DNA from: Lenisia limosa
Lineage: Eukaryota > Protista > Breviatea
Direction of reading: 5' to 3'
Assembly: GCA_001655205.1 (NCBI GenBank)
Contig: LPNZ01011109.1
Location: forward strand, 1-50,411
Length of the DNA: 50,411 nt
The notes under the pieces are model-generated. The model was not told the origin of the DNA and ran no database searches. It worked only from the letters and a program-made list of their open reading frames with translations. The position numbers and the translations under genes are program-made. Shown here piece after piece: positions 9,579 to 43,422 of the stretch (position 1 is the first letter of the stretch; every line of letters starts with the position of its first letter).

Positions 9579-12500
9579 TTATTCAAAAAGGGGGAAGAAC
9601 ATCATCTTCAACCTGAAGGAGTAAATGAGAAGAAATGAGAGAGAAACCCTCACTTGAAAAGCAGAATCGGGGGGAAGGACTGGGACAGGTATGTTGAAGG
9701 AATTGATCTACAATGTTAGCAGTAAGGGAGAATCAAACCTTCTTTTTCATCCACCTTTCTTCATCTTGCTGTTGCTTGGCAAGATGGTATTTCCACAGGG
9801 GCTTTGCGCTCAATTCAGGGGCACCTTTGAACGCCTAATAAGTCAGGCTATACTTCCTCGGATCAATAGCCAACCGGATTGATTTCTTTGGCCAACATCC
9901 CTCCTCTATCGCTAACTAAGTCGCAGACAGTTTTCAATTCATTTCTTTGAAGTTCATCCAGTGCTGTGAAGCCCTGAAATATAAGCTATCTCATCGATAA
10001 CAACAAACTAACCAGTTTATCTTTGATATTGATCTTGACTTTTGCGTTAATCAAAAGATCAACAATTTCTGGATCGTCCTTTTCAAGATAGGCTAAAGGT
10101 TGCCTTCCCTAATTGACATGACTCCAGTAGACAACACAGTAGTTCACCAGTAGTTGGATTCCGAATACATTAACGCTATGAAAAGAGACAGTTTTTGAAA
10201 CACGAGAGAAAATACGGAAAGTACAGTGTTACGAAATCCATCACTCACCAAAAATCCTGGAGAATTAGGGTCTGCACCAGCCTCAAGGAGAATTTTAACT
10301 GCACTAGGGTTGTGAAGAGCGATTGCTCTGTGTAAAACAGTTTCGCTCTATAAATGTCATTCAAAAGAATATCTCACAAATTTGTTTTTCTTCGAAATAG
10401 AAGCCCCTGCAGTGATTAGGAGAGTAAGTGAATCAGTAGTATCCAGACAAATGCTGAAAAAGAGAGCGGTTTCTTTCTAAAATGGTGAATAGTAAAGTGA
10501 ACCCTCACCAATTCAGACTCAGCTTCAATATTTGCTCCTTTTTTGATAAGGTATTCAGCAACCTGAAACATTAAACACAATTAGAAAGTTAACCCTTCAA
10601 ATATTATTGAACTTTTTGGAAATTATCAGCTTCTCATTCAGAATGTGGTAATTCCATTTAAAACTATTAACCAACCGCATTTCTGTTCATGATTGCAGCA
10701 AGCATCAATGGAGTAATACCCTAAATAGTTATTTGGGGTGTATCGGATATCGAAAAATAAAGATAAGAAATGAAACAAGATTGCATCTGGCCGAAACCGT
10801 CCACACCATCACNNNNNNNNNNNNNNNNNNNNNNNAAAGGCTTTAAGAATAATATTGATAACGCCCTCAAAGAATACTAATCATATCATATCATATCATA
10901 TTATACAAATTTTATATTATTATCAATCCTGATGGTTCCCCACTTACAGAGTTGTTTGCATCCTCAATATCCATTCCCTTTTCTCGCAAGAACTTCACAG
11001 ATCTGATATCTCCACATCTTGCAGCCTCAGCAAGCAAAGAATTTCCCTAAAATTACAAAAATATCACAAAAAAAGACCCAACTTGTTTGTCTTTTGCATT
11101 CATATCAGCTCCATTGTCAAGAAGAAGGCGCATTCCTAATTCGTTTATAATACAAATTTTGATATTTTGATCAAAACCCACTCACCTTCAAAGTTAGAAA
11201 AACGGAAGGCCAGAAAGATCAATGGTTTTTCCTACATTTATGAATACAACTCAAGAAATAAAAACACTTTGAGGAGTTGTATCACGAATTGTACAAAAGA
11301 TTATAAAAGAATTCCAAAGTTTGTTCACACAAGAATTCTCATAACTGAAGTCCGCAATTATTATTAACAGTTAATATTGGTATGGAAAATAAATGTCTCA
11401 TCAATATCAGTTTTACTTCGCTCCTTTAAAATTTAAGAATTCAAAAAAATAAACTTCATACCATTGACGTTGTTTTGACTTCTGCTCCACACTCAATCAG
11501 ATAAGATGCAATCTCATTTCGACGATAATAAATAGCCGCACCAAGAGGGGATAGTCCAACCTAGACTATCACAAAGAAGTTCTGAGTTGAACTAAAATCC
11601 AAGAAGAGGAAAACTAACACTAGTATGATCAAATGATACACTTAATATGTCTTTAATCACCTCATTTTGAATATTAATGTCAGCACTAGCCTCAACAAGT
11701 AGCTTTGTCGTTTCTACACGCCCGTTGGCTGCATGGTACAGAAGAGGGGTGCTTCCCTAAACAGTGACTGAAAATTGATAAAAAAAAAGAAAAAATGCAC
11801 TGTTGGTCTGAATTTGTGGTTATAAAGAGTCCTAAAACCTCGACATCCTTCAAATTAAGATCCGCTTCCGCTTCAATTAAAAGTCTCACTACTTCAGCAT
11901 TCTGCTTGTATGCTGCAAAATGAAGAGGTGTAAACCCCTAAATTGATAAGTGAGACTAAATAAATAAAATAAAACACCAAACAACTTCCAACCATGTTAT
12001 CCTGGGCATTGACTTCTGATTGGTGTACAATATAATATCGCACAGCTTCATCATCTCCATCCATACACGCTCTGTGTAAGCATGTACGGCCCTGCAAATG
12101 GTCAGATTGTCACAGAAGCTGAATTACAATTGACTTACATCAACAAAAGTTGCAGGAATTTGGTTAGGAACTAAAGGCTGGCCTTTGATAATTATCAAAG
12201 CTTCCCCAACAGGATCAATGTCTGATTTTTGGTCAGCAAAGAGAGAAATAGATTCAAACCTGTAGGGCAGCCAGATGCGGTTGAAGGGACAAATTTTAAA
12301 TATCTTAAGGTCTCCTCTAAAAGGGTAATAATTGGGTAACAGATTACTTGACCTACCTCCTCGAAGTGATTTCATTAAAGGAGATATTTCAAAAGGCATA
12401 CGCCTCCATACCTCACCCTTTTTCAAGACAACCTCTTCCTAGAAAAATAACGAAAAGGCACTCCATACCCTTTTGAAACATTCTTCTTCTGAACCACCCA

Positions 12501-13099: not shown

Positions 13100-14841
<1,742 letters not shown>

Positions 14842-15066
14842 GTCTTCTGACTCTTGTATATTATGTACTTTTAGTTGTTATGGTCTTCAGTTTGTTTTGT
14901 GAGAGTGGATGACCTTAGGGTTTGAAGCCAAGCTTTCTTAATGTAGACTCAACTCGCTATTTCAATTTGGATATTTATTGTTTGACTATCGTGTTACAAG
15001 CCCATCACCAGGATCGTTATCCCTTTTTCGGTCTCTTTCCTTTCTCTTCTTTCCCAACCTAATAGA

Positions 15067-18996: not shown

Positions 18997-20851
18997 TTAT
19001 ATTATATAAGTATACATTTGAATATGGATACATGCTATTGTATTATATGACGTTGCGTTGACCCTTTGTGATGTAATATCTGACTTACTAGGGTTTTGGG
19101 AACACTCATAAAAGAGTCGGTTTTGATTGTCTCTTAAATTTGGATCAGCTCCGTTGTCGAGAAGCGTTGTCAAAGTTTGAATATGATTACCATACGACGC
19201 AAGATGCAAGGCTAGAAAATCATTCTTTTCCAATTGTGAACCAACCCGTTTCTGAGTCACGTGACAGAACTCTCATATTAATATCCAGAGCGTGGTGAAC
19301 AAGCAGCTCTTCAATTACCTCGGTGTGTCCTGAAACAATTTTAAATTGCAACAAATCGAAGAGGTAAAAATAGAAAAAGTGACTGAAATGTGCACCAGCA
19401 AATATAATGACCAAACAAAACTAAACCATCAGGATTAAGACAGTTAAACCAGTCAAACAACAAAGAGGATACACAGATAAATAGCCAATACTTTTATGAA
19501 AGTATCATTGATGAGAATAAAAAAATGCCGGCCTTAACTAGTTACGCACCTTGCATTGCAGCAATATGTAGTGGAGTGCGTCCGTTATTATCCATCAAGT
19601 TCGGTCGAAGACCACCTTCAATGTGATTTCCCCAACAATTCAACGATAAAACAGTCAAACATTTCCTTACCTGATCTTACTAAAACTTTTACAGCATCTG
19701 GGTGGTTTGCAAAACAAGCAAAATGTAAAGGAGTTCCACCAGAGTTCCTGTATTGTAATAAACTGTCTCGAACTAGTGGTTCATAACAGTCTTACAAAAC
19801 AAAGGTTTACTGCATACGAAGGAGGGTTGATAGAAATACCGAAGAGTTGTCCGTGAGCTAACAGTTCCCCAAGCATTGTAGGTGGGGAAAAGTGTGAAGC
19901 AAGGTGTAGTGGAGTCCTAGATTGGTGAAACAGAGTTTTCTTACCTTGGTGAATTCACAATAAAGCTTATACCCATACCATTTCAGTAAGTAGCTGTATT
20001 TAGCTCATTTTACACTTAGCAATTTTTGGGAGTTTTGGGGCTAAACTCAGCTTGAAGTTGTTTTACAACGTTAAGTACTATATTAAAGCTTTGTTTTAAG
20101 AGATAGAAAGAGGTAAAAGTCTCTTAGATGAAGAGAAAAAAGAGTGTTTAGCTATATCCACCTCTAGTAGAAATTATTAGCTAAGTACAAAATGAGCTAA
20201 ACACAGCTAAGTACTGAATGTTACAGGCTCCAGATCAATGTGAAAATTTCAACACATTTCTTACCGTCCTTTTTTGTCAGTTGTATTAATAGAAGCAGCA
20301 GGATTGGCAGTTTCTTTGAGAAGTATTCTCATTGAAGCAAGGTCTCCACTAAAAACATCAACAACATAACATCCCTTTCGAACTTTGCAATAGACCAGTG
20401 CAGCGGAGTAAATCCTTTTTCATCTTGCTCAGCTAACTCAAGAGGTGAACTTTCAGTAATTAATTCTTGAAGAGTTGCTACAACAATGAAAATGACACAA
20501 TTACTGACCATGGTCTCCATGTCGAACAGCATTATGAAGGGGGAAATGATTTGAAGCGACGCTTGATTCCTCATGATCTGACCAGCCAACAACGCTAATG
20601 CCATCATCCTCATCTTCAACCACCCAATACACGCTTTCGTCACAGCAAACAGTGTCATCTGAATCGGTGTCGAAAAGGTTCTGGCCTCCTTCGAAGGTTG
20701 AGTCATCGCTGGATTGTTCATCTGGATAAGAAAACAACAAGGAATAATCATTTTCTGGATAGACTAGCCCTTCTATTCTATCTTTTACACTTGACGTATC
20801 ACTTTCAGCTGATTCATCATTGTAAGAGTCAAGGTAATGATCGGACTCCAT
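18997..20851 (-). CDS. Multi-exon ankyrin-repeat protein with acidic N-terminus; 3' end uncertain
   Basis: HFPLHNAVRHG, GFTPLHWSI, RTPLHLAS, GGTPLHFACFANH, GRTPLHIAAMQGH, ETALHLASYGNH...GADPNLRD joined by GT-AG introns; D/E/S-rich first exon 20520-20851. Confidence 0.75.
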
Positions 20852-22703: not shown

Positions 22704-23162
22704 ATGTCTGTCGCTAAGGTTTCTCATCCGCTCTACACCGTCATGGCCCTGACTGCCGTCAAGGAATGCTCCGGCCGCACCGCTGCTTCTCTTGTTGCCA
22801 TCAACAAGCACCTCGTCGAGAAGTACCAGCTTACCCCCGCCTCTTGCCGTACCAACGTCAACCGCGCTCTCAAGAAGCTCGTTGAGGAGAAGAAGGTCGA
22901 GAAGATCAAGGCTTCTTACAAGCTCCTCGATGCCGGCAAAGAGGCTCTCAAGCCCAAGAAGGCCCCTAAGAAGGTTGTCAAGAAGGTCGTCAAGAAGGTC
23001 GTCAAGAAGCCCGCTGCCAAGAAGGCCGTCAAGAAGGTTGTCAAGAAGACTGTCAAGAAGGACGCTAAGAAGGCTGTCAAGAAGACTACCAAGAAGGCCA
23101 CCAAGAAGCCTGCTGCCAAGAAGGCCGCCAAGAAGACTGCCCCTAAGAAGGCTGCCAAGTAG
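22704..23162 (+). CDS. H1: Linker histone H1, intronless
   Basis: Winged-helix globular domain (SHPLYTVMALTAV...SLVAINKHL...VNRALKKLVEEKKVEKIKASYKL) plus Lys/Ala/Val/Pro-rich tail; strong codon bias. Confidence 0.93.
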   Translation: MSVAKVSHPLYTVMALTAVKECSGRTAASLVAINKHLVEKYQLTPASCRTNVNRALKKLVEEKKVEKIKASYKLLDAGKEALKPKKAPKKVVKKVVKKVVKKPAAKKAVKKVVKKTVKKDAKKAVKKTTKKATKKPAAKKAAKKTAPKKAAK

Positions 23163-35738: not shown

Positions 35739-38700
35739 CTAAGAAAGAAGTTCGACGTCGATAGAAGCGACAGGGTCGGTATCTCGACTGTGTTTCACTA
35801 CCTAAAAATGATGACAAATGATGAAGCCACCAAGTCAAACCTTAACATGATCCACAATGATGCCGTCGACGCCGGCCTTTTCCTGAGCCTTGACGTTCTC
35901 GGGGTTGTTATTGAGCGACCCGTACGTCAATAGAAGAAGATTGTTGGACTTGACGTGGTTGACCAGCCTTGGCGCATTGATGATGGGAGGGCAGAAGGAC
36001 ACCACTCCAGCAAGGTTGATAGAACGCGCAAACCACACTGCAGCCTGCGAGGTTACAAATATGTATTAAGGACTTTTTTTGGTGCACATTTATTGAAACA
36101 AGGATAATATAATCCAGCTAGGAAGGTACCTCTAAAGACACAGTTGCGGGGTGAGGGATGACTCCCATCATTTTGGCTTCCTCCATGTCCCTAGGGTTCC
36201 CTGGGTCGTCAATCAAGACAACACGCATCCACTGCTACCCCAGAAAAAAAAAGTGTCCAACCAGCGGAAGTGAGGAAGAGAACAGGGAACTGGGGCTGCT
36301 TCAGTCGAGCTGGAGTGTGAAGAAAAGGAGTAAATAAGGGAAGTCTAAATTTATGTAGTATTAATTGATGACTATAATATGATATACTATGTACATCAGC
36401 ACATTATAAGCTGAAGTTTCATCACTATTCCCCCCCTATCCCTTAAAAGCATTGAGAGCTTCGCCCACTAATGATGCAAATTTCAGGACAGAAAGAGCTG
36501 AAAAAGATTTGCCTGTCTCCAGCCTTGTCAAAAACAAGCTAAACGAGTGAGTGAAAAAAGGACAACCAGTTGTCTTACCTTGAGAATAGTATCTACGTAG
36601 GTATTGACAGTGGGGAAAACCGCTCGAGGTTTGGCCAGATTGAAGTTGAGAGGGTACTTCAACTCAATGTTAAATCCGCATGTTGTAGGAACTTTCACCA
36701 AGAGATCTTCCAAACTGCTCGCAATAAGACGTGGTATCAAGCCATCACAAATGTGGAAAATGTAATACTTACGTTGGGTAGCAGTCTTCAATCGTGTTAT
36801 TCGCCTCCTTCCAGCGCTAAAGGTGGTAAGTAACAAAAACTCAATACGCAGTATCCCCACGCATACAGCTGTGCTTGTCATTTGAAGATCGTCAACCGTC
36901 TGAGTCTTCCTTCTAAACTGCTGTCTATCCCTGGGATGTTAGTGTTCAAGTAAAAAAAAACAAAAAACAGAAGAAATATCTCAAAGACGTACTTTTTGAG
37001 GATACTGAAGTTTTTGAATTGTTTCAGTGTCAAGTTGTGAATGTATGTTTCGTAGCCGTGTTGAAGGGGAATCTGGAGAGTGTCAGAAAAATAGGCTCTA
37101 TTCATTATTTCTTCTCATAACACCAACAATCCTCACCGAGAAGTTGTGGTAAATGACAGGAACCATGTCGGCAGTCAATTGCACGTCGAATTCAACAAAC
37201 TCGGCTCCCTACAGGATGAAAGCAGAGATGTGAACAATAATGAAAAGTAAAAACATAATGACAACATACAGCTCTTGCGGCTTCTTGGAAGGAAAGAAGG
37301 GTGTTTTCACGAATGTGGAACTGCCTGTCGAGTGCATTGTTACCAGCACCGGCGCCACGATGACCAATTAACTTCAGAATATGAACAGAGATTTACAAAA
37401 GGTCATAAAAACATATTGAATCAGTCCTTTTTCAGTTAACCCCAAATGTGACAACAACAAAAAAAAGATACCCAAATCATGGATACAATAACAGAAACGG
37501 CATTATGGGGCAGACCTTGGTTTTAATCGGATCCCATCGCAGAAGTCCCAACGATTGTGTTGAAGAGGGGTGCATGTGCTGAGATGTCAGAAAACAGTAG
37601 CAATGGTAACGAGTCGTACTGGGAGGATGAAGAGGAACTCGAAAGAGAGTGTGGCAATGGGGGCCAAACGGGGCGACAAGACAGTGACAGAGGCGTAGCC
37701 ATGTTCCTTCGTGATGTGCTGTGGATAGTGATGATGATGATGGTGATGATGATGATAAATAGTGATGATGATGATGAATAGTGACGCAGCCTCAATTAAG
37801 GCATATGACGACTGACCATATCATTGAGGAAAGCTCTTCCGACCAACGCGTGTGACCCTAAAGAGTTAGGCACCCTGTAGTAAACATGAACCACGAACCG
37901 GGTTCGATCAAATCGATCTGCAGGGAATGCAGGTCCTCTTTGTTACTCGCTGTCCATGTCATCGTAATACCTCCCTCATGCTTCATAGGGTACTAGAGAG
38001 TCAGTAACCCCATATATCTGGGCGTACCTGAGCTGTTTGCGGCCGGGGGCGTGATGACTTTGACAGGTGCGGCGAAATAATGACACTTCCAACCTGGAGG
38101 TAAAGGAGGGTTTTACACTTAATTTTTTACTATTTTCAAAACAGTTTTAGCTCAGATACACAACCCATTGCTTATTGAGAGTCACGAGGACGCACCTCAA
38201 CTTCTTGATCAAGGAGGGACAAACTCTCCCGCGTCAGTGTAATGCGTAACTGATGAGACGACACAAGCCATCCTTCCTCCACATAACTAAGGATGTCAGC
38301 CCTGCTTGACCCCACCCCCAAAATCACATTATCAAATCCCCCATTCCAACCGTTGCTGTCTTGAAAGGGCGACAACAGAAGGCAAATGGACAAAGCCGAA
38401 AACGGACAGAGGGAGGTGCTCACAAGGTTCTGGAGATGTGAATGAAATAAAATGGTAGCGCACCATTGATGTACACGGTTCTTGGCCGAGGCAGAGCTTC
38501 CCAGCGCTTCAGATGGTTGCCACTTCGAATGATGTATTTGTACTGATACGCCTTATCAAGTTGGAGGAACGACACATCGGCCGTCCAATTGACGCGAGAG
38601 TTATCAACAGGATCGGCAACCTTGGTCATTGGAATTGCGTAGGCAGGATCCCAGCAGCCGAAGATCTTCTCCTCACCAACAATGCAGATGTACTCACTGC

Positions 38701-41700
38701 CAAGGGTGACAAGGGTGACAAGGGTGAAATAAGCCTCAACCTTTGCAGACCTTTCGCGAAGGGGCTGGTCAGTGGTCACATTGAAAGTCACGGTGCAGTC
38801 CAAGACTGCCACAGTACTAGTCGACCTCGTGAACCTCGGGCCAACATATGCCGTGTTTGTAATATCCGTCACTATGGAGAAATGAGAAAATAACAGCCAC
38901 ACCGCCAAGTCAACAAAGGCACGGAAAGTGATGACACACTAACAAATTTAGCAATGAGAAATATAAAAAATATGGTTGTATCTGGCCTAAGCCGTCCACA
39001 CCATCACNNNNNNNNNNNNNNNNNNNNNNNNNNNNNNNNNNNNNNNNNNNNNNNNNNNNACAACTAACATACCAAGTGGAAGGTCTGTGAGAATCTTAGA
39101 CGTTGGCGATGGAAGCGCCTCAGGGCTCGACATGGGGCTGCCCATCTCATCCGTCTGGTATCCCATACTGGACTTTGGGATAGAAATGGCAGGGGAAGAT
39201 CTGCGGGTCATAAAAGAGGTCAAGAAGGCTTACCTTGGAACCTGGATATCTGGTGACGCGAACGGTGCCGAGCCTAACTCCTTCCGACTGGCAAGCCCCT
39301 CGCTCTGGAGAATGAACTCGACAAATGAGACCCACCTTTTGCTTTTCCTGTCTTCTTTGGTTCTGGACCCTGTTGTGGAACGAGTTTCTTGCAGCTTTGA
39401 GTTCGGCTTCGTTATCCTCAGCATGGGTGCGGCACACTTCGCCAACCTACATGGGTCATTCATAGTTGTTGATAATTGTGACAAAAAGGTCAGGAACATG
39501 AAATCTTTGTTGACATTAATTGATGATAATATGACAAGTAATGCCCCCACTCCCCCTACTGAAAGATGTCCCCTCCAATTTGCAGTCACAAAAGGAGTCC
39601 AACTCTAAACAGTAAAAAGAGAACTTCTCTCGGCTCGGTAGTTCATTTCATATGTATGTTCAAAGACATGATGATACAACAGTCATCCTCAAACGTATTT
39701 ATCTCTGAGGTTTTTGGTGCAACCGTACTCCACCAGAAGAGTAGCACACTGCAAATGGCCCTCATGACACGCGTCATGAAGAGCAGTCTGACCACGGCGA
39801 TCTTGGTGGTTTACTACTTCCTCCAGAATGTTCCTGCTTTTGGCAGCCTTGAGGATAAAGTCGATGCAGCTAGGGTTGCCGTACGCCGCCGCTGGAAGGT
39901 CATGTGACAAGCAACAAACAAACCCTTGTTGAGGGGAGAGCGGAGGTCGTTGTTGAGGGGTGCAATGTTGATCTCCTTATGCTGACACAGAACTTCAGCC
40001 GACCGGCCGGACCCAAGCTGCGGCGGTAAAAGCAATAGGAAACTAGCATCATATTGAAGCCATCCATCTACATTTCTAAGGGATATGATTGATTATATTT
40101 GATGATTCACCAAATTATTGAATATTGGGTGTGATGTAGCACTGGAAGCAACAAACAACAATCGATATATTCTATAGACATACACGTACGTATATGATAT
40201 ATATATATCATATATGAAATCTTATGTTGAGCAGAAATACGGTTTCAGAGAGAATATGAAGGCAGACCTGGCAGGCGATATGAAGTGGACTGTTTCCGTT
40301 TTTATCAGTCAGATTAGCCGCGGCAGGGGAGACGCGACTCAGCATTTCAACAACCTGACAAGTCAAGTTCAGGTTAGGTGCATTTTAGTAAAGCTGCTTG
40401 AAGAGACAGAAGTAGAGTATGAAACACGATGCCTACATCACTAGCGTCATTTGAGACAGCAATATGAACGGGAGAAGCACCGTTATCATCAGGGTGTGAC
40501 AGGGACGAAATGCCTGCACACGATACTAAGGTGTGTCATCTTCAACAAAAGAATGTGAAATTGCACCAGATGGACAAACATTCTGAATCCCATACATCAT
40601 ATATCCTTTATCCCATACATCATATATCCTTTATCCTTTCCAGGAACAATTACTTTGGATCCAGAATATCAAACAAAACAAATACCAACCTGGCTTGTCG
40701 GAAGAAGGGCTCAAAGGGCTCATGGTTGACACCTTGGCTGAGGGCGACTTGATGCTCAACAGCGAAACGCTGGACTCCATCACTGACCCGGCAACTGCGG
40801 CATCCACACTCGGTCTGCAAGGTGAACGTCGTGGAAAAAAATAGTTTTGAGACATTCATGGGGCAATCCCAATATAATGGTACCATCATACTCCATTGCA
40901 ACAACATTGGTATCTTGAACATCCTCAGTCTCCAGCACTTCAGCATCTTCTGACTCAAATCGGCTCAAAACGCTACACCGTTAAAGGATCGAATACATCA
41001 TTGAGAACTGACACTGCAAAAAACAAAGGCCAAGTACATATGATACGATTCGTTTGTGTTAAAAAAAAAGCGAAGTTTTGGAAATTTAAATGGAGCCCCA
41101 GTACTTAGGGCAGAAAAGAGAGCGGCAGAGCTCCAAAGAGCCTTGCAAAGCAGCTACATGCATCGGGGTTCTTCCATTAGCGCCTGAACTGTTAAAGACT
41201 TGTCCCAAAGCCTATTTATCACGCACCGGGGATATTAGCGGAGCTGCCTTTGGAAACTAAAAGAGCGGCAATGTCGGCACGGCTGTTTTGGACCGCAACA
41301 TGAACTACACTCATAAGAACCGCTACCAAGAATGGCACTCACGTGGTGTGTCACTGGAGTTGTTCTGAACATCAGGGTTTACATTCGCTCCATGGAGATA
41401 GAAGAAAAGCTCAAGGTCTCCAATGTCTCCAATACGGGCGAGATGATGCAGGGTTCTGGAGGGGTTAACAGAAAACCTATCCTGGACAGCTTACGTCATT
41501 CCACGGAAGTCGGAAGCTTCAGGAGTGCACACGTGGACTGCCTTCATCAGTGTGTGCACTACGGCACGGGTAGCTGGTAGTTGTTCCATTGCTCTAGAAC
41601 ATAAAGACTAGCCTTGGCAACTACAGAAATGGAAATAGCAAAATTTCATAAAAATGTCTGGGAAGCGTACTTGTGAAGAGTCAAGGTACAAGCCTCAATT

Positions 41701-43422
41701 GACTGCAGATCAGGCTTCATTTGTTGGAGATACTCCTGAAGCTGGCCTAACTTACTAATATGACTCAGCATCTACGGAGTCAGTAACGTAATCGGAAAGA
41801 GTCCAAACCTTAAGTTCACTGAAAGCTGTCTCCTTTGGGGTCTTGATCGAATTGCGTGCGGATGTTGTGTGCATTTGCTGAAGTATAAATGATACTAGGT
41901 CATATAAAAAAAACATTATTTTTGACATCCTGATGAAGACGATGTAAGTAGCAAGGAGTATTTGGTATAAACTCAATTTGTGTTCAAAAGCTGAATCACT
42001 ATTCGTCTCTGTCTCCTAACATACGACCGTGTAACAAATCCATCTCAGCCCTTATCATTTCCATCTCACAGATGATCCAATTGGGAAGAAGTTCTGTGCT
42101 GTGACCTGAACAGTGAGAGGAAACACTTATTGAGCAAGGAGGTATTACAACACTAGTCCCACCAAGTTGGCAACAGGGGGGCGTGCGAACGTGATTTCTA
42201 CAATGTGAAACAGCACAAAGTACTAAGAATATATTGTTCTTTCACACAAACCATTAGTGGCGGAGGGAGCAGACGAAGCAAGAAGGTCCAGCCTCTCGAT
42301 CTGCTGTGCAACTGCCTCCACCATGTCCTGTGCCTGGTATGGCGTACTGAAAGCAGCCGTCTCAACCTGAAAGATCATGTCATTGGTACTTAAATGTATC
42401 TCTACTCGGCTTCGTTAGGTCGAAGTGAAGCAAGGGCAATGTAAAACAAGAGAAATATCAACGTTGGGAGGTGCAAGAAAAACTAAGCTCTTATCCTGTG
42501 AATTAAAAGGTTTCAAAATCTAATTTGCATAGCACAAAACTCTCTCCCAACCCCTATTAAGTAAACAATATAAACTCTGTTGAAAGGAGACACGAATAGA
42601 TCGGAATGTGCTGACGTGTACCCCCCCCAAAAAAACAGAAGAAATAAATCTCGAGATGCCAACCTTTTGCTCCAAATATTCGTCCATTGTTATAAGGCCA
42701 GTGTTTTTATCATGTTTCTTGAGAGCCTTGCGGAAGCCCTGGAAAGTGAAAAGTGCCGAAGGTAGTGGCGATCGGGCTAATTCATGAACGATTAAGCCTC
42801 GGCCTGCTCCTCACAGTCTTATTCCACTCGCAGAACGACATCAATTGGACAAGACGGTGGCGAAGCTCAACAAATGACCATCTGGCATATTGGAAGGCAG
42901 CCTAAGGAGGTTAGCCCGCTTGCCCCCCCCCCCCCNNNNNNNNNNNNNNNNNNNNNNNNNNNNNNNNNNNNNNNNNNNNNNNNNNNNNNNNNNNNNNNNN
43001 NGCAAAAGTACGATACTGTATGAAAAGCAAGGTTGGGGTAAGTATCAGAAAGTTGCATAATATCGTCCCAACCAAACCTGATCCACGGTTCCAGCCTCCA
43101 CAAATGTGTTGACTTTGGCAACAAGATTAGTGTATTGACCTGATATATAAAACGACAATACTGAGCAACCAACCGGAGAACTCTTTATTCTTCCATAAAT
43201 AGAATGAGGACACCTTATCCAATTGCTGATCTAGTTCATTGAAAAAGGATGCTGGCTCTTTTTCAATGATGTGTTTCAAGAGCCTGAAAGATTACACAAG
43301 TAAAGTAGCACCGGCAAACTTGTAAGAAATGTAATAGGATGACCAAACAGGAATGCAAGCCTCTTTTAATGCTTTTCCAAACTAAAAGTCAATGGGATGG
43401 TTCCTGAAAGAAGTACCTTCAT
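35739..43422 (-). CDS. GDE1: Glycerophosphodiester phosphodiesterase with SPX, ankyrin repeats, CBM20 and GDPD domains (Gde1/GPCPD1-like); C-terminus may extend to ~35490
   Basis: SPX: [50 protein letters not shown]. Ankyrin exons 39690-41500 ([35 protein letters not shown]). CBM20 38470-38800. GDPD: [62 protein letters not shown]. Confidence 0.88.
37719..37781. repeat. (GAT)n microsatellite within the GDPD gene
   Basis: Runs of gatgatgat. Confidence 0.85.
38949..39059 (+). repeat. Dispersed repeat family copy 4, in an intron of the GDPD gene, running into an N gap
   Basis: tagcaatgagaaata matches 3184; gtatctggcctaagccgtccacaccatcac matches 10783-10812. Confidence 0.8.
40588..40636. repeat. 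Perfect 23 nt tandem duplication in an intron
   Basis: tcccatacatcatatatccttta x2. Confidence 0.9.

What the first reader, a model, noticed from the sequence alone, without database searches (positions are those of the whole stretch)
35739..43422. Four-domain SPX-ankyrin-CBM20-GDPD enzyme joining the fungal and animal architectures
Seen: all four domains on one strand, linked by splice-compatible exons; SPX ligand-binding motifs (YISYK, KKHDK) and CBM20 aromatic and Lys residues (GCWDP, YKYII, RWE) look intact. Known: yeast Gde1 is SPX-ANK-GDPD and animal GPCPD1/GDE5 is CBM20-GDPD. Inference: one protein could couple inositol-pyrophosphate (phosphate) sensing, glycogen/starch binding and glycerophosphocholine hydrolysis, and may reflect the ancestral form from which each lineage lost a module.
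Basis: partly seen in the sequence, partly recalled or inferred. Interest (0 to 1): 0.72.

Follow-up and report, generated by a model that had tools for sequence, protein, structure and literature searches.

The report
SPX-ankyrin-CBM20 glycerophosphodiesterase gene, one transcript
A real, expressed 44-exon protist gene encodes one enzyme that joins the phosphate-sensor and ankyrin parts of yeast Gde1 to the glycogen-binding part of animal GPCPD1, but the same layout already sits unremarked in public protein sets of slime moulds and plasmodiophorids.

Summary
On the minus strand, from ATG 43422 to TGA 35835-35837, exon-level Pfam hits lie in the order SPX, ankyrin, CBM20, C2_GDE1, GDPD. They are collinear with full-length homologues.

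Spliced poly(A) RNA contigs show canonical GT..AG introns of 31-297 nt. My 44-exon, 1318-codon model reproduces their depth profile to 0.01 in 16 consecutive bins. Overlapping contigs tile the ankyrin exons through to the CBM20 exons, so it is very probably one gene.

Assembly gap 39008-39059 lies inside an RNA-proven intron. Gap 42936-43001 lies in a predicted intron that I could not test.

The SPX inositol-pyrophosphate residues, CBM20 site-1 residues and GDPD catalytic motifs are intact.

The novelty claim fails. The same architecture occurs in at least 11 named species: nine Amoebozoa, plus Plasmodiophora and Spongospora. It also occurs in unnamed transcripts. I found no paper that discusses it.

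The ancestral-form idea is plausible. A tree needs one change per module. However, a separate short CBM20-GDPD clade complicates the idea that each lineage lost a module.

Other agents' notes, untested here, name the genome as Lenisia limosa, a breviate. The scan has not noted this on other DNA.

Verdict: a new member of an existing, unstudied variant.

The parts
35835..43422 (-). Whole coding span: ATG 43422 to TGA 35835-35837. The model has 44 exons, a 3957-nt CDS, 1318 codons and introns of 31-297 nt (median 61).
   Evidence: Gene model. The frame is open through every exon and split codon. Predicted RNA depth equals observed depth in bins 37000-42900.
42664..43422 (-). SPX domain, exons 1-6. 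Sequence elements: MK|FGKALKE..., YISY|[17 protein letters not shown], ...NKT|[11 protein letters not shown].
   Evidence: Pfam SPX hits on three exons. Alignment to homologues. Introns 42739-42814 and 42367-42663 are seen in RNA. Exons 1-4 rest on splice sites and homology only.
42936..43001 (.). Assembly gap 2, inside predicted intron 42902-43077. It falls in the variable alpha3-alpha4 region of SPX.
   Evidence: Donor CAG|GTTTGG at 43077 and acceptor CCTTAG| at 42902. Not covered by the laid RNA, so untested.
41671..42366 (-). Inter-domain region between SPX and ankyrin, exons 7-11.
   Evidence: RNA joints 42198-42251, 42106-42162 and 41878-42069. The exon 10/11 junction is not covered by RNA.
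39560..41593 (-). Ankyrin-repeat region, exons 12-22, including the capping half-repeat [15 protein letters not shown] (39560-39604).
   Evidence: Pfam Ank hits. Family-HMM hits at positions 352-578. Exon layout confirmed by RNA depth to 0.01.
39073..39446 (-). Charged, Ser/Pro-rich linker, exons 23-25. It holds the 31-nt intron 39305-39335 and the 33-nt intron 39201-39233, both needed to keep the frame.
   Evidence: RNA contigs r4 (down to 39377) and r3 (up to 39391) overlap here. Depth in bins 39167-39363 and 39364-39560 fits only if both short introns are spliced out.
39008..39059 (.). Assembly gap 1, wholly inside intron 38872-39072. Its lower flank, about 38970-39007, is a high-copy repeat.
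   Evidence: RNA contig record 3 joins 38871 to 39073 with GTATGT...CATAG ends. DNA-run depth is about 16,000 in bin 38970-39166.
38464..38871 (-). CBM20 starch/glycogen-binding module, exons 26-27, split by intron 38697-38750.
   Evidence: Pfam CBM_20 at E 7e-10. Alignment to glucoamylase SBD 1AC0 and a CGTase. Best hits in 1.8 billion proteins are CBM20 domains in the middle of 1150-1180-aa homologues.
37620..38429 (-). C2_GDE1-like beta-sandwich region, exons 28-33. Intron 37719-37816 carries the ATC/His-codon repeat.
   Evidence: Pfam C2_GDE1 positions 119-148 on exon 33, E 0.008. Family-HMM hits. RNA joints and depth. Intron 38302-38350 is inferred only.
35835..37578 (-). GDPD catalytic domain, exons 34-44. 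Motifs: [34 protein letters not shown].
   Evidence: Pfam GDPD on three exons. Motif alignment. RNA joints down to 37073. Exons 37-44 rest on homology and splice sites.

Best explanation
This is one expressed, intron-dense gene. The host is a protist that other agents' notes name as the breviate Lenisia limosa. The gene encodes a cytosolic glycerophosphocholine/glycerophosphodiester phosphodiesterase of the Gde1/GPCPD1 family of about 1318 residues. Its layout is SPX - ankyrin repeats - CBM20 - C2_GDE1 - GDPD.

Shown here: the domains, their order, splicing, transcription, and intact motifs.

Inferred by analogy:
- The SPX domain binds inositol pyrophosphate and is needed to switch the enzyme on, as shown in vivo for S. 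pombe Gde1.
- CBM20 site 1 tethers the enzyme to glycogen-like alpha-glucan.

It is an orthologue of the four-domain proteins already present, unstudied, in Amoebozoa and plasmodiophorids.
For: Domains, in order, on one strand, collinear with homologues.

Transcription and splicing:
- All 15 listed joints, plus those read from the pieces table, are GT..AG in the minus sense.
- The 44-exon model keeps one open frame.
- With the contig lengths, the model predicts the observed depth to within 0.01 in 16 consecutive bins, 39167-41727.
- Contigs r5, r4, r3 and r2 overlap by 11, 15 and 30 nt. Together they run from before the ankyrin repeats to past CBM20.
- The RNA run holds 0.30 of sampled words, against 0.35 expected if every exon were covered.

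Homologues with the same five modules in one ORF include intron-free transcript assemblies.

Motifs:
- The SPX Y..YK and KxxKKxxK patterns match the Vtc4 PBC/KSC residues (PMC9911596).
- The HR of GHRG equals S. pombe Gde1 H810/R811, and the SPX site is required for activity in vivo (PMC12937664).
- Equivalents of CBM20 W543, K578, W590 and W563 are kept.
Against: - No single read or contig spans the whole gene, and RNA depth is low (3-33).
- The r4/r3 and r5/r4 overlaps (15 and 11 nt) are deduced from contig lengths and depth, not read from a printed alignment.
- RNA does not cover 41761-41866 or 38291-38414.
- I could not examine RNA above 42846 (exons 1-5 and gap 2) or below 37000.
- Several exon Pfam hits fall below the family cut-offs when taken alone.
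- CBM20 site-2 Tyr556 and site-1 Asn595 equivalents are not kept.
- No biochemical data exist for any four-domain member.
- I did not verify the organism name.
Confidence: 0.85

Rival explanations
1. There are two adjacent genes on the same strand: an SPX-ankyrin gene ending near 39400-39600, and a CBM20-C2-GDPD (GPCPD1-like) gene starting at one of the Met codons in exon 25 ([14 protein letters not shown]).
For: Short CBM20-C2-GDPD proteins exist as separate genes in other protists, for example Protostelium P0189 and Planoprotostelium P0217. No single RNA contig spans the junction. In-frame Met codons exist in exon 25.
Against: RNA contig r4 splices the last full ankyrin exon to 39560-39604 and on to 39446-39377. 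Contig r3 runs from CBM20 up to 39391. They therefore overlap within one exon, leaving no room for a terminator and promoter. The frame is open across the junction. The nearest relatives are fused.
Confidence: 0.05
2. It is one transcript but not one working protein: a decaying or mis-assembled gene whose frame is broken in parts that RNA did not cover. Candidates are gap 42936-43001, 38291-38414, and exons 37-44.
For: Those parts rest on predicted splice sites only. A search with free tiny introns can nearly always find an open path. The scaffold has two gaps inside the gene.
Against: Every motif that can be checked is intact and aligns without loss to homologues, including in the uncovered exons 2, 5, 6, 40, 41 and 44. 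The RNA is spliced and comes from a poly(A) library. Where RNA exists, the predicted exons were exactly right.
Confidence: 0.05
3. It is a Pho81/NUC-2-like regulator, not an enzyme: an SPX-ankyrin scaffold with a GDPD-like domain that no longer catalyses.
For: Pho81-type proteins share SPX, ankyrin and a GDPD-like part. They appear among weaker hits, where some sources name chytrid proteins 'pho81'.
Against: GHRG, ENT, EFDVQLT, the second His, NIELK and FSSF are all kept, as in active Gde1 and four-domain homologues. The C2_GDE1 module is present. The best matches are Gde1/GPCPD1-type proteins.
Confidence: 0.04

Closest known systems
Four-domain SPX-ANK-CBM20-C2_GDE1-GDPD proteins of Amoebozoa and Rhizaria. 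Examples: Cavenderia fasciculata DFA_07167 (P0181), Acytostelium subglobosum (P0176), Protostelium nocturnum (P0004), Ceratiomyxa fruticulosa (P0146), Plasmodiophora brassicae (P0183), Spongospora subterranea A0A0H5QT02 (P0185).
   Same: Same modules in the same order and similar length (1150-1460 aa against about 1318). CBM20 lies mid-protein, directly before C2_GDE1-GDPD. They give the highest summed similarity to the window.
   Different: Only about 30-57% identical in the conserved blocks. The window comes from a different lineage, probably Breviatea. None of these proteins has been studied, and their sources name them only 'GP-PDE domain-containing' or 'hypothetical'.
Fungal Gde1 (S. cerevisiae and S. 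pombe glycerophosphocholine phosphodiesterase). The same form occurs in choanoflagellates (P0198, P0209) and Chromosphaera (P0205).
   Same: SPX, ankyrin, C2_GDE1 and GDPD in that order. The catalytic HR and the SPX Tyr/Lys residues shown to be needed in S. pombe are kept (PMC12937664).
   Different: These proteins lack CBM20. In the tree they form their own opisthokont clade, with support 97/90.
Animal GPCPD1 (GDE5/EDI3).
   Same: The CBM20-C2_GDE1-GDPD unit and its linker motif: '[15 protein letters not shown]' here against the GW...R.RL stretch that I recall in the human protein (from memory). CBM20 site 1 is conserved and site 2 is not, as reported for the animal paralogues (PMC12913940).
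   Different: The animal protein starts at CBM20 and has no SPX or ankyrin part. The PDB search with the CBM20 exon did not reach the human CBM20 entry.
Pho81 / NUC-2 (SPX-ankyrin-GDPD-like CDK inhibitor).
   Same: SPX and ankyrin N-terminal half.
   Different: The GDPD motifs here are intact, and CBM20 and C2_GDE1 are present. This points to an enzyme, not a kinase inhibitor.

Membership tests
Gde1/GPCPD1-type glycerophosphocholine phosphodiesterases | GDPD (PF03009) catalytic domain | tested here: met
   Three exons hit PF03009 at profile positions 1-21, 23-50 and 179-243 with 16.1, 36.2 and 36.6 bits. The family cut-off is 23.6.
Gde1/GPCPD1-type glycerophosphocholine phosphodiesterases | Catalytic residues: HR of GHRG, acidic pair of EFD, second His, E/K of NIE.K | tested here: met
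   IGHRGAG, EFDVQLT, IYHN and GFNIELKYP align column for column with 12 homologues. HR equals S. pombe H810/R811, whose mutation abolishes activity (PMC12937664).
Gde1/GPCPD1-type glycerophosphocholine phosphodiesterases | C2_GDE1 (PF25329) module directly before GDPD | tested here: inconclusive
   Only the last exon of the region reaches the profile: positions 119-148, E 0.008, 17 bits against a cut-off of 27. Family-HMM matches are weak. The joined region was not scanned.
Gde1/GPCPD1-type glycerophosphocholine phosphodiesterases | Hydrolysis of glycerophosphocholine | not testable with these tools
   Needs an enzyme assay.
Four-domain SPX-ANK-CBM20-C2-GDPD subfamily (Amoebozoa, Rhizaria) | All modules in this order in one polypeptide | tested here: met
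   Order shown by exon hits. One open frame. Overlapping spliced RNA contigs run from ankyrin to CBM20. Two short stretches and both ends are not covered by RNA.
Four-domain SPX-ANK-CBM20-C2-GDPD subfamily (Amoebozoa, Rhizaria) | SPX with the inositol-pyrophosphate binding residues (Tyr/Lys of helix 2, KxxKKxxK of helix 4) | tested here: met
   YISY|K and KALKKHDK. The pattern equals Vtc4 Y22/K26 and K129/K132/K133/K136 (PMC9911596).
Four-domain SPX-ANK-CBM20-C2-GDPD subfamily (Amoebozoa, Rhizaria) | CBM20 with the site-1 aromatic platform and Lys | tested here: met
   Pfam CBM_20 at 39.1 bits. Equivalents of W543, K578 and W590 of glucoamylase SBD 1AC0 are kept. The N595 and Y556 equivalents are not. 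The residue roles are from my own knowledge.
Fungal Gde1 architecture (SPX-ANK-C2-GDPD) | No carbohydrate-binding module between ankyrin and C2 | tested here: not met
   A CBM20 is present at 38464-38871. Opisthokont members show none at E 0.01.
Animal GPCPD1 architecture (CBM20-C2-GDPD) | CBM20 at the N-terminus, with no SPX or ankyrin | tested here: not met
   About 650 residues of SPX, ankyrin and linker precede CBM20 in the same transcript.
Pho81/NUC-2 regulators | Degenerate, non-catalytic GDPD-like domain | tested here: not met
   All GDPD motifs are intact.

The most novel reading that the evidence does not exclude
The four-domain protein is the ancestral long form of this enzyme in Amorphea, or older. 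A breviate, lying just outside apusomonads plus opisthokonts, still has it. If so, CBM20 was lost on the opisthokont stem, giving the Gde1 form of fungi, choanoflagellates and ichthyosporeans. Animals then dropped the long form and kept an old short CBM20-GDPD paralogue. In the retained form, inositol-pyrophosphate gating and glycogen tethering act on one phospholipid-recycling enzyme.
Probability: 0.4. Interest if true: 0.45.

Novelty: new member of a known kind. Interest (0 to 1): 0.3.

Why it matters
The gene gives a transcript-checked example of the long, five-module form of the Gde1/GPCPD1 enzyme outside Amoebozoa and Rhizaria. If the genome is Lenisia, that example is in a breviate.

It shows that the fungal and animal layouts are two trimmed versions of a wider family, not unrelated inventions.

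It also offers a natural protein in which two open questions could be tested together:
- what the CBM20 of GPCPD1 is for;
- how SPX and inositol pyrophosphate switch Gde1 on.

It is not a new kind of protein. At least 11 named species already carry it in public databases.

Tried and rejected
- A whole-protein word search with P0005 was swamped by unrelated ankyrin proteins. Restricting to the CBM20-to-end region fixed this.
- The ESM Atlas look-up returned only fungal SPX-ANK-GDPD clusters and none with CBM20.
- The PDB sequence search with the CBM20 exon reached only amylolytic enzymes at weak E-values, not the human GPCPD1 CBM20.
- Paper searches for SPX + CBM20 + GDPD terms found nothing on the architecture.
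- The first unconstrained splice search produced wrong pieces: a 6-nt exon at 38424-38429, an intron inside the RNA-contiguous exon 39695-39891, and a 352-nt read-through exon at 36579-36930. I corrected these with RNA piece boundaries, loose ends and homology.
- The second run mis-chose the last exons, so I kept the first run's version there because it preserves PVLFLTSAG and VSLE|AAVWFAR.
- A reading without the 31-nt intron 39305-39335 was rejected. It puts a stop near 39150 and mispredicts the depth of two bins (4.69 against 3.87 observed; 2.44 against 3.26).
- The organism could not be named from the histone H1 look-up, which returned only ENA contig ERZ3820729 NODE_66.
- Exon 3 was translated in the wrong phase, so that block is ignored.
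- The window's protein was not placed in the tree, because that needs the joined exons.
Full report
**What is there.** The finding lies on the minus strand. Stop-free stretches of that strand, scanned one by one against Pfam, give hits in this order, from 43.4 kb down to 35.8 kb:
- SPX: 43130-43291, E 7e-5; 42523-42810, E 4e-3.
- Ankyrin: best 39692-39976, E 3e-10.
- CBM_20: 38423-38938, E 7e-10, 39 bits against a cut-off of 23.
- GDPD: 37101-37208, E 9e-9; 35838-36065, E 7e-9.

Trimmed exons add the SPX N-terminus (43322-43381), the SPX KKHDK helix (42664-42738, E 3e-4), the GHRG exon, and a match of 37620-37718 to the end of PF25329, C2_GDE1 (E 0.008). C2_GDE1 is the beta-sandwich that Pfam places before the GDPD domain. 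The protein therefore has five modules, not four.

**One gene or two: RNA.** One poly(A) RNA run of the same study as the best DNA holder carries 30% of the sampled 31-letter words of 37000-42900. Its contigs, laid on that stretch, show only joints with CT..AC ends on the plus strand, which are GT..AG introns of a minus-strand gene. After the stated cut shifts, every one of them is canonical. Listed intron sizes run from 35 to 297 nt.

I built an exon model by a splice-path search. It used the RNA joints as fixed points and was corrected with piece boundaries, loose ends and homology. The final model has:
- 44 exons and 3957 coding bases, giving 1318 codons;
- introns of 31-297 nt, median 61;
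- an open frame through every exon and split codon.

I checked exons one at a time and kept no joined protein.

**The strongest test.** The tool gives one depth figure per contig. So the model, plus each contig's length and one anchored piece, predicts the mean depth of every 197-base bin.
- Prediction and observation agree to 0.01 or better in 16 consecutive bins, from 39167 to 41727.
- Elsewhere the differences equal the aligner's 1-4-base cut shifts, two un-laid loose ends (11 and 15 bases), and one further contig of depth 9.8.

This fixes the contig extents:

| Contig | Extent |
|---|---|
| r6 | 42846-41867 |
| r5 | 41760-40744 |
| r4 | 40754-39377 |
| r3 | 39391-38763 |
| r2 | 38792-38415 |
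| r7 | about 38290-37899 |
| r1 | 37922 down to about 35893 |

Contigs r5, r4, r3 and r2 overlap by 11, 15 and 30 bases. Spliced RNA therefore runs without a break from before the ankyrin repeats, through the linker, to beyond CBM20.

A reading without the 31-base intron 39305-39335 would put a stop near 39150. It predicts depths of 4.69 and 2.44 where 3.87 and 3.26 are observed, so that intron is spliced.

Of all 31-mers of the stretch, 35% lie wholly in model exons, against the 30% held by the RNA run. Nearly all exons are therefore expressed.

Not covered by RNA:
- 41761-41866;
- 38291-38414, so intron 38302-38350 is inferred;
- everything above 42846;
- everything below 37000.

**The gaps.** Gap 39008-39059 lies inside intron 38872-39072. 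RNA contig r3 joins 38871 directly to 39073 (GTATGT...CATAG), so the frame does not depend on the gap. The gap's lower flank is a high-copy repeat, with DNA depth near 16,000, which explains why assembly broke there.

Gap 42936-43001 lies between a good donor (43077) and a good acceptor (42902), in the variable loop between SPX helices 3 and 4. The flanking exons align to homologues with nothing essential missing. My laid stretch ended at 42900, so this remains inference.

**Intact parts.**
- SPX: YISY|K and KALKKHDK reproduce the Tyr/Lys and KxxKKxxK pattern of the phosphate-binding and lysine-surface clusters. These are Vtc4 Y22, K26, K133 and K129, K132, K136 (PMC9911596).
- GDPD: IGHRGAG, ENT, EFDVQLT, IYHN (Choanoeca also has HN), GFNIELKYP and FSSF all align with 12 homologues.
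- CBM20: aligned to the glucoamylase starch-binding domain 1AC0, the equivalents of W543, K578, W590 and W563 are kept. Those of Y556 and N595 are not. The residue roles are from my own knowledge. This fits the reported pattern of a conserved site 1 and a variable site 2 in animal CBM20 proteins (PMC12913940).

[quoted passage not shown] In S. pombe Gde1, mutating the HR pair or the SPX Tyr/Lys/Asn site abolishes hydrolysis in vivo. The authors conclude that IP8 activates the enzyme (PMC12937664). I infer the same gating here. I also infer that CBM20 binds a glycogen-like glucan and so localises the enzyme. None of this can be tested with these tools.

**Is it new?** No. A search of 1.84 billion representative proteins with the CBM20 stretch found only 26 hits. 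Among the best were proteins of 1150-1180 residues with the match in mid-protein. Pfam shows them to be SPX-ANK-CBM20-C2_GDE1-GDPD.

Region-restricted searches and cluster look-ups give the same layout in:
- Amoebozoa: Acytostelium subglobosum, Cavenderia fasciculata, Heterostelium album, Polysphondylium violaceum, Tieghemostelium lacteum, Dictyostelium purpureum, Protostelium nocturnum, Ceratiomyxa fruticulosa and Clastostelium recurvatum. In some of these, SPX is weak or unflagged.
- Rhizaria: Plasmodiophora brassicae and Spongospora subterranea.
- Unnamed JGI and Logan transcripts. P0005 is an intron-free 3562-base contig of run SRR17973843.

Other layouts found:
- Choanoflagellates and Chromosphaera have the Gde1 form without CBM20.
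- Green algae, Planoprotostelium and, as a second gene, Protostelium have a short CBM20-C2-GDPD form.

I found no paper that mentions the long architecture. It is known to databases but not discussed.

**Evolution.** I built a maximum-likelihood tree of the C2+GDPD part of 37 proteins. Rows left out: the window itself, all animals (none was available), and most of the fungal hits.
- Opisthokont SPX-ANK-GDPD forms are one clade (97/90).
- Short forms are one clade (92/96).
- The four-domain forms sit unresolved between them.
- Presence of CBM20 and presence of SPX-ANK each need one change.

The tree is unrooted, so gain and loss cannot be told apart. Given the spread over Amoebozoa, Rhizaria and this genome, an old four-domain form is a reasonable reading. 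However, the separate short-form clade, and the co-occurrence of both forms in Protostelium, suggest an old paralogy rather than simple module loss in each lineage.

**Organism.** The window matches ENA metagenome contig ERZ3820729 NODE_66. Notes of other agents name the genome Lenisia limosa, a breviate with very short introns. The 2016 poly(A) metatranscriptome and the 31-36-base introns seen here fit that. I did not verify it. All introns I could check end in AG.

**Verdict.** The novelty of the architecture is refuted. It is a new member of an existing, unstudied variant of the Gde1/GPCPD1 family, of moderate evolutionary interest.

Noticed in passing
window 38970-39007: The lower flank of assembly gap 39008-39059 is a very high-copy repeat. 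DNA-run contig depth is about 16,000 in that bin, against about 37 elsewhere. Many short contigs and loose ends pile up there, and one RNA contig starts there with 255 unrelated bases.
   Followed up: partly
window 37718-37782: An ATC/ATG-rich simple repeat would read as a poly-His run in one frame. It lies inside intron 37719-37816 and is removed from the RNA, so it is not a coding His tract.
   Followed up: yes
window 38796: One RNA contig follows the gene up to 38796, inside exon 26, and then continues with 23 unrelated bases (TTTGTTCCAACAATCCATACAAG on the plus strand). This could be a chimeric contig, an alternative joint or a variant. It is unexplained.
   Followed up: no
window 13106-14900 (+): A conventional beta-tubulin gene ([21 protein letters not shown]..., [16 protein letters not shown]...) is split by introns and by two 10-base assembly gaps at 13723-13732 and 14087-14096.
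   Followed up: no
window 10960-11940 and 19120-20700 (-): Further ankyrin-repeat coding stretches elsewhere in the window, hit by the ankyrin parts of the homologues in tblastn. They are separate ankyrin genes, not part of this one.
   Followed up: no
window 22704-23159 (+): Lys/Ala-rich histone H1-like ORF of 152 residues. The identical product is called on ENA metagenome contig ERZ3820729 NODE_66_length_64282, which shows where the window comes from.
   Followed up: partly
window 35835-43422 (-): Very high intron density: 43 introns in a 3.96-kb coding sequence, with a median of 61 bases and many of 31-41 bases. All that could be checked are GT..AG, unlike the GT..TG micro-introns that other agents report for this genome.
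   Followed up: partly
proteins P0004 and P0189 (Protostelium nocturnum, EukProt EP01117): One amoebozoan carries both a long SPX-ANK-CBM20-C2-GDPD protein (1180 aa) and a short CBM20-C2-GDPD protein (658 aa). The short one groups with green-algal short forms in the tree.
   Followed up: partly
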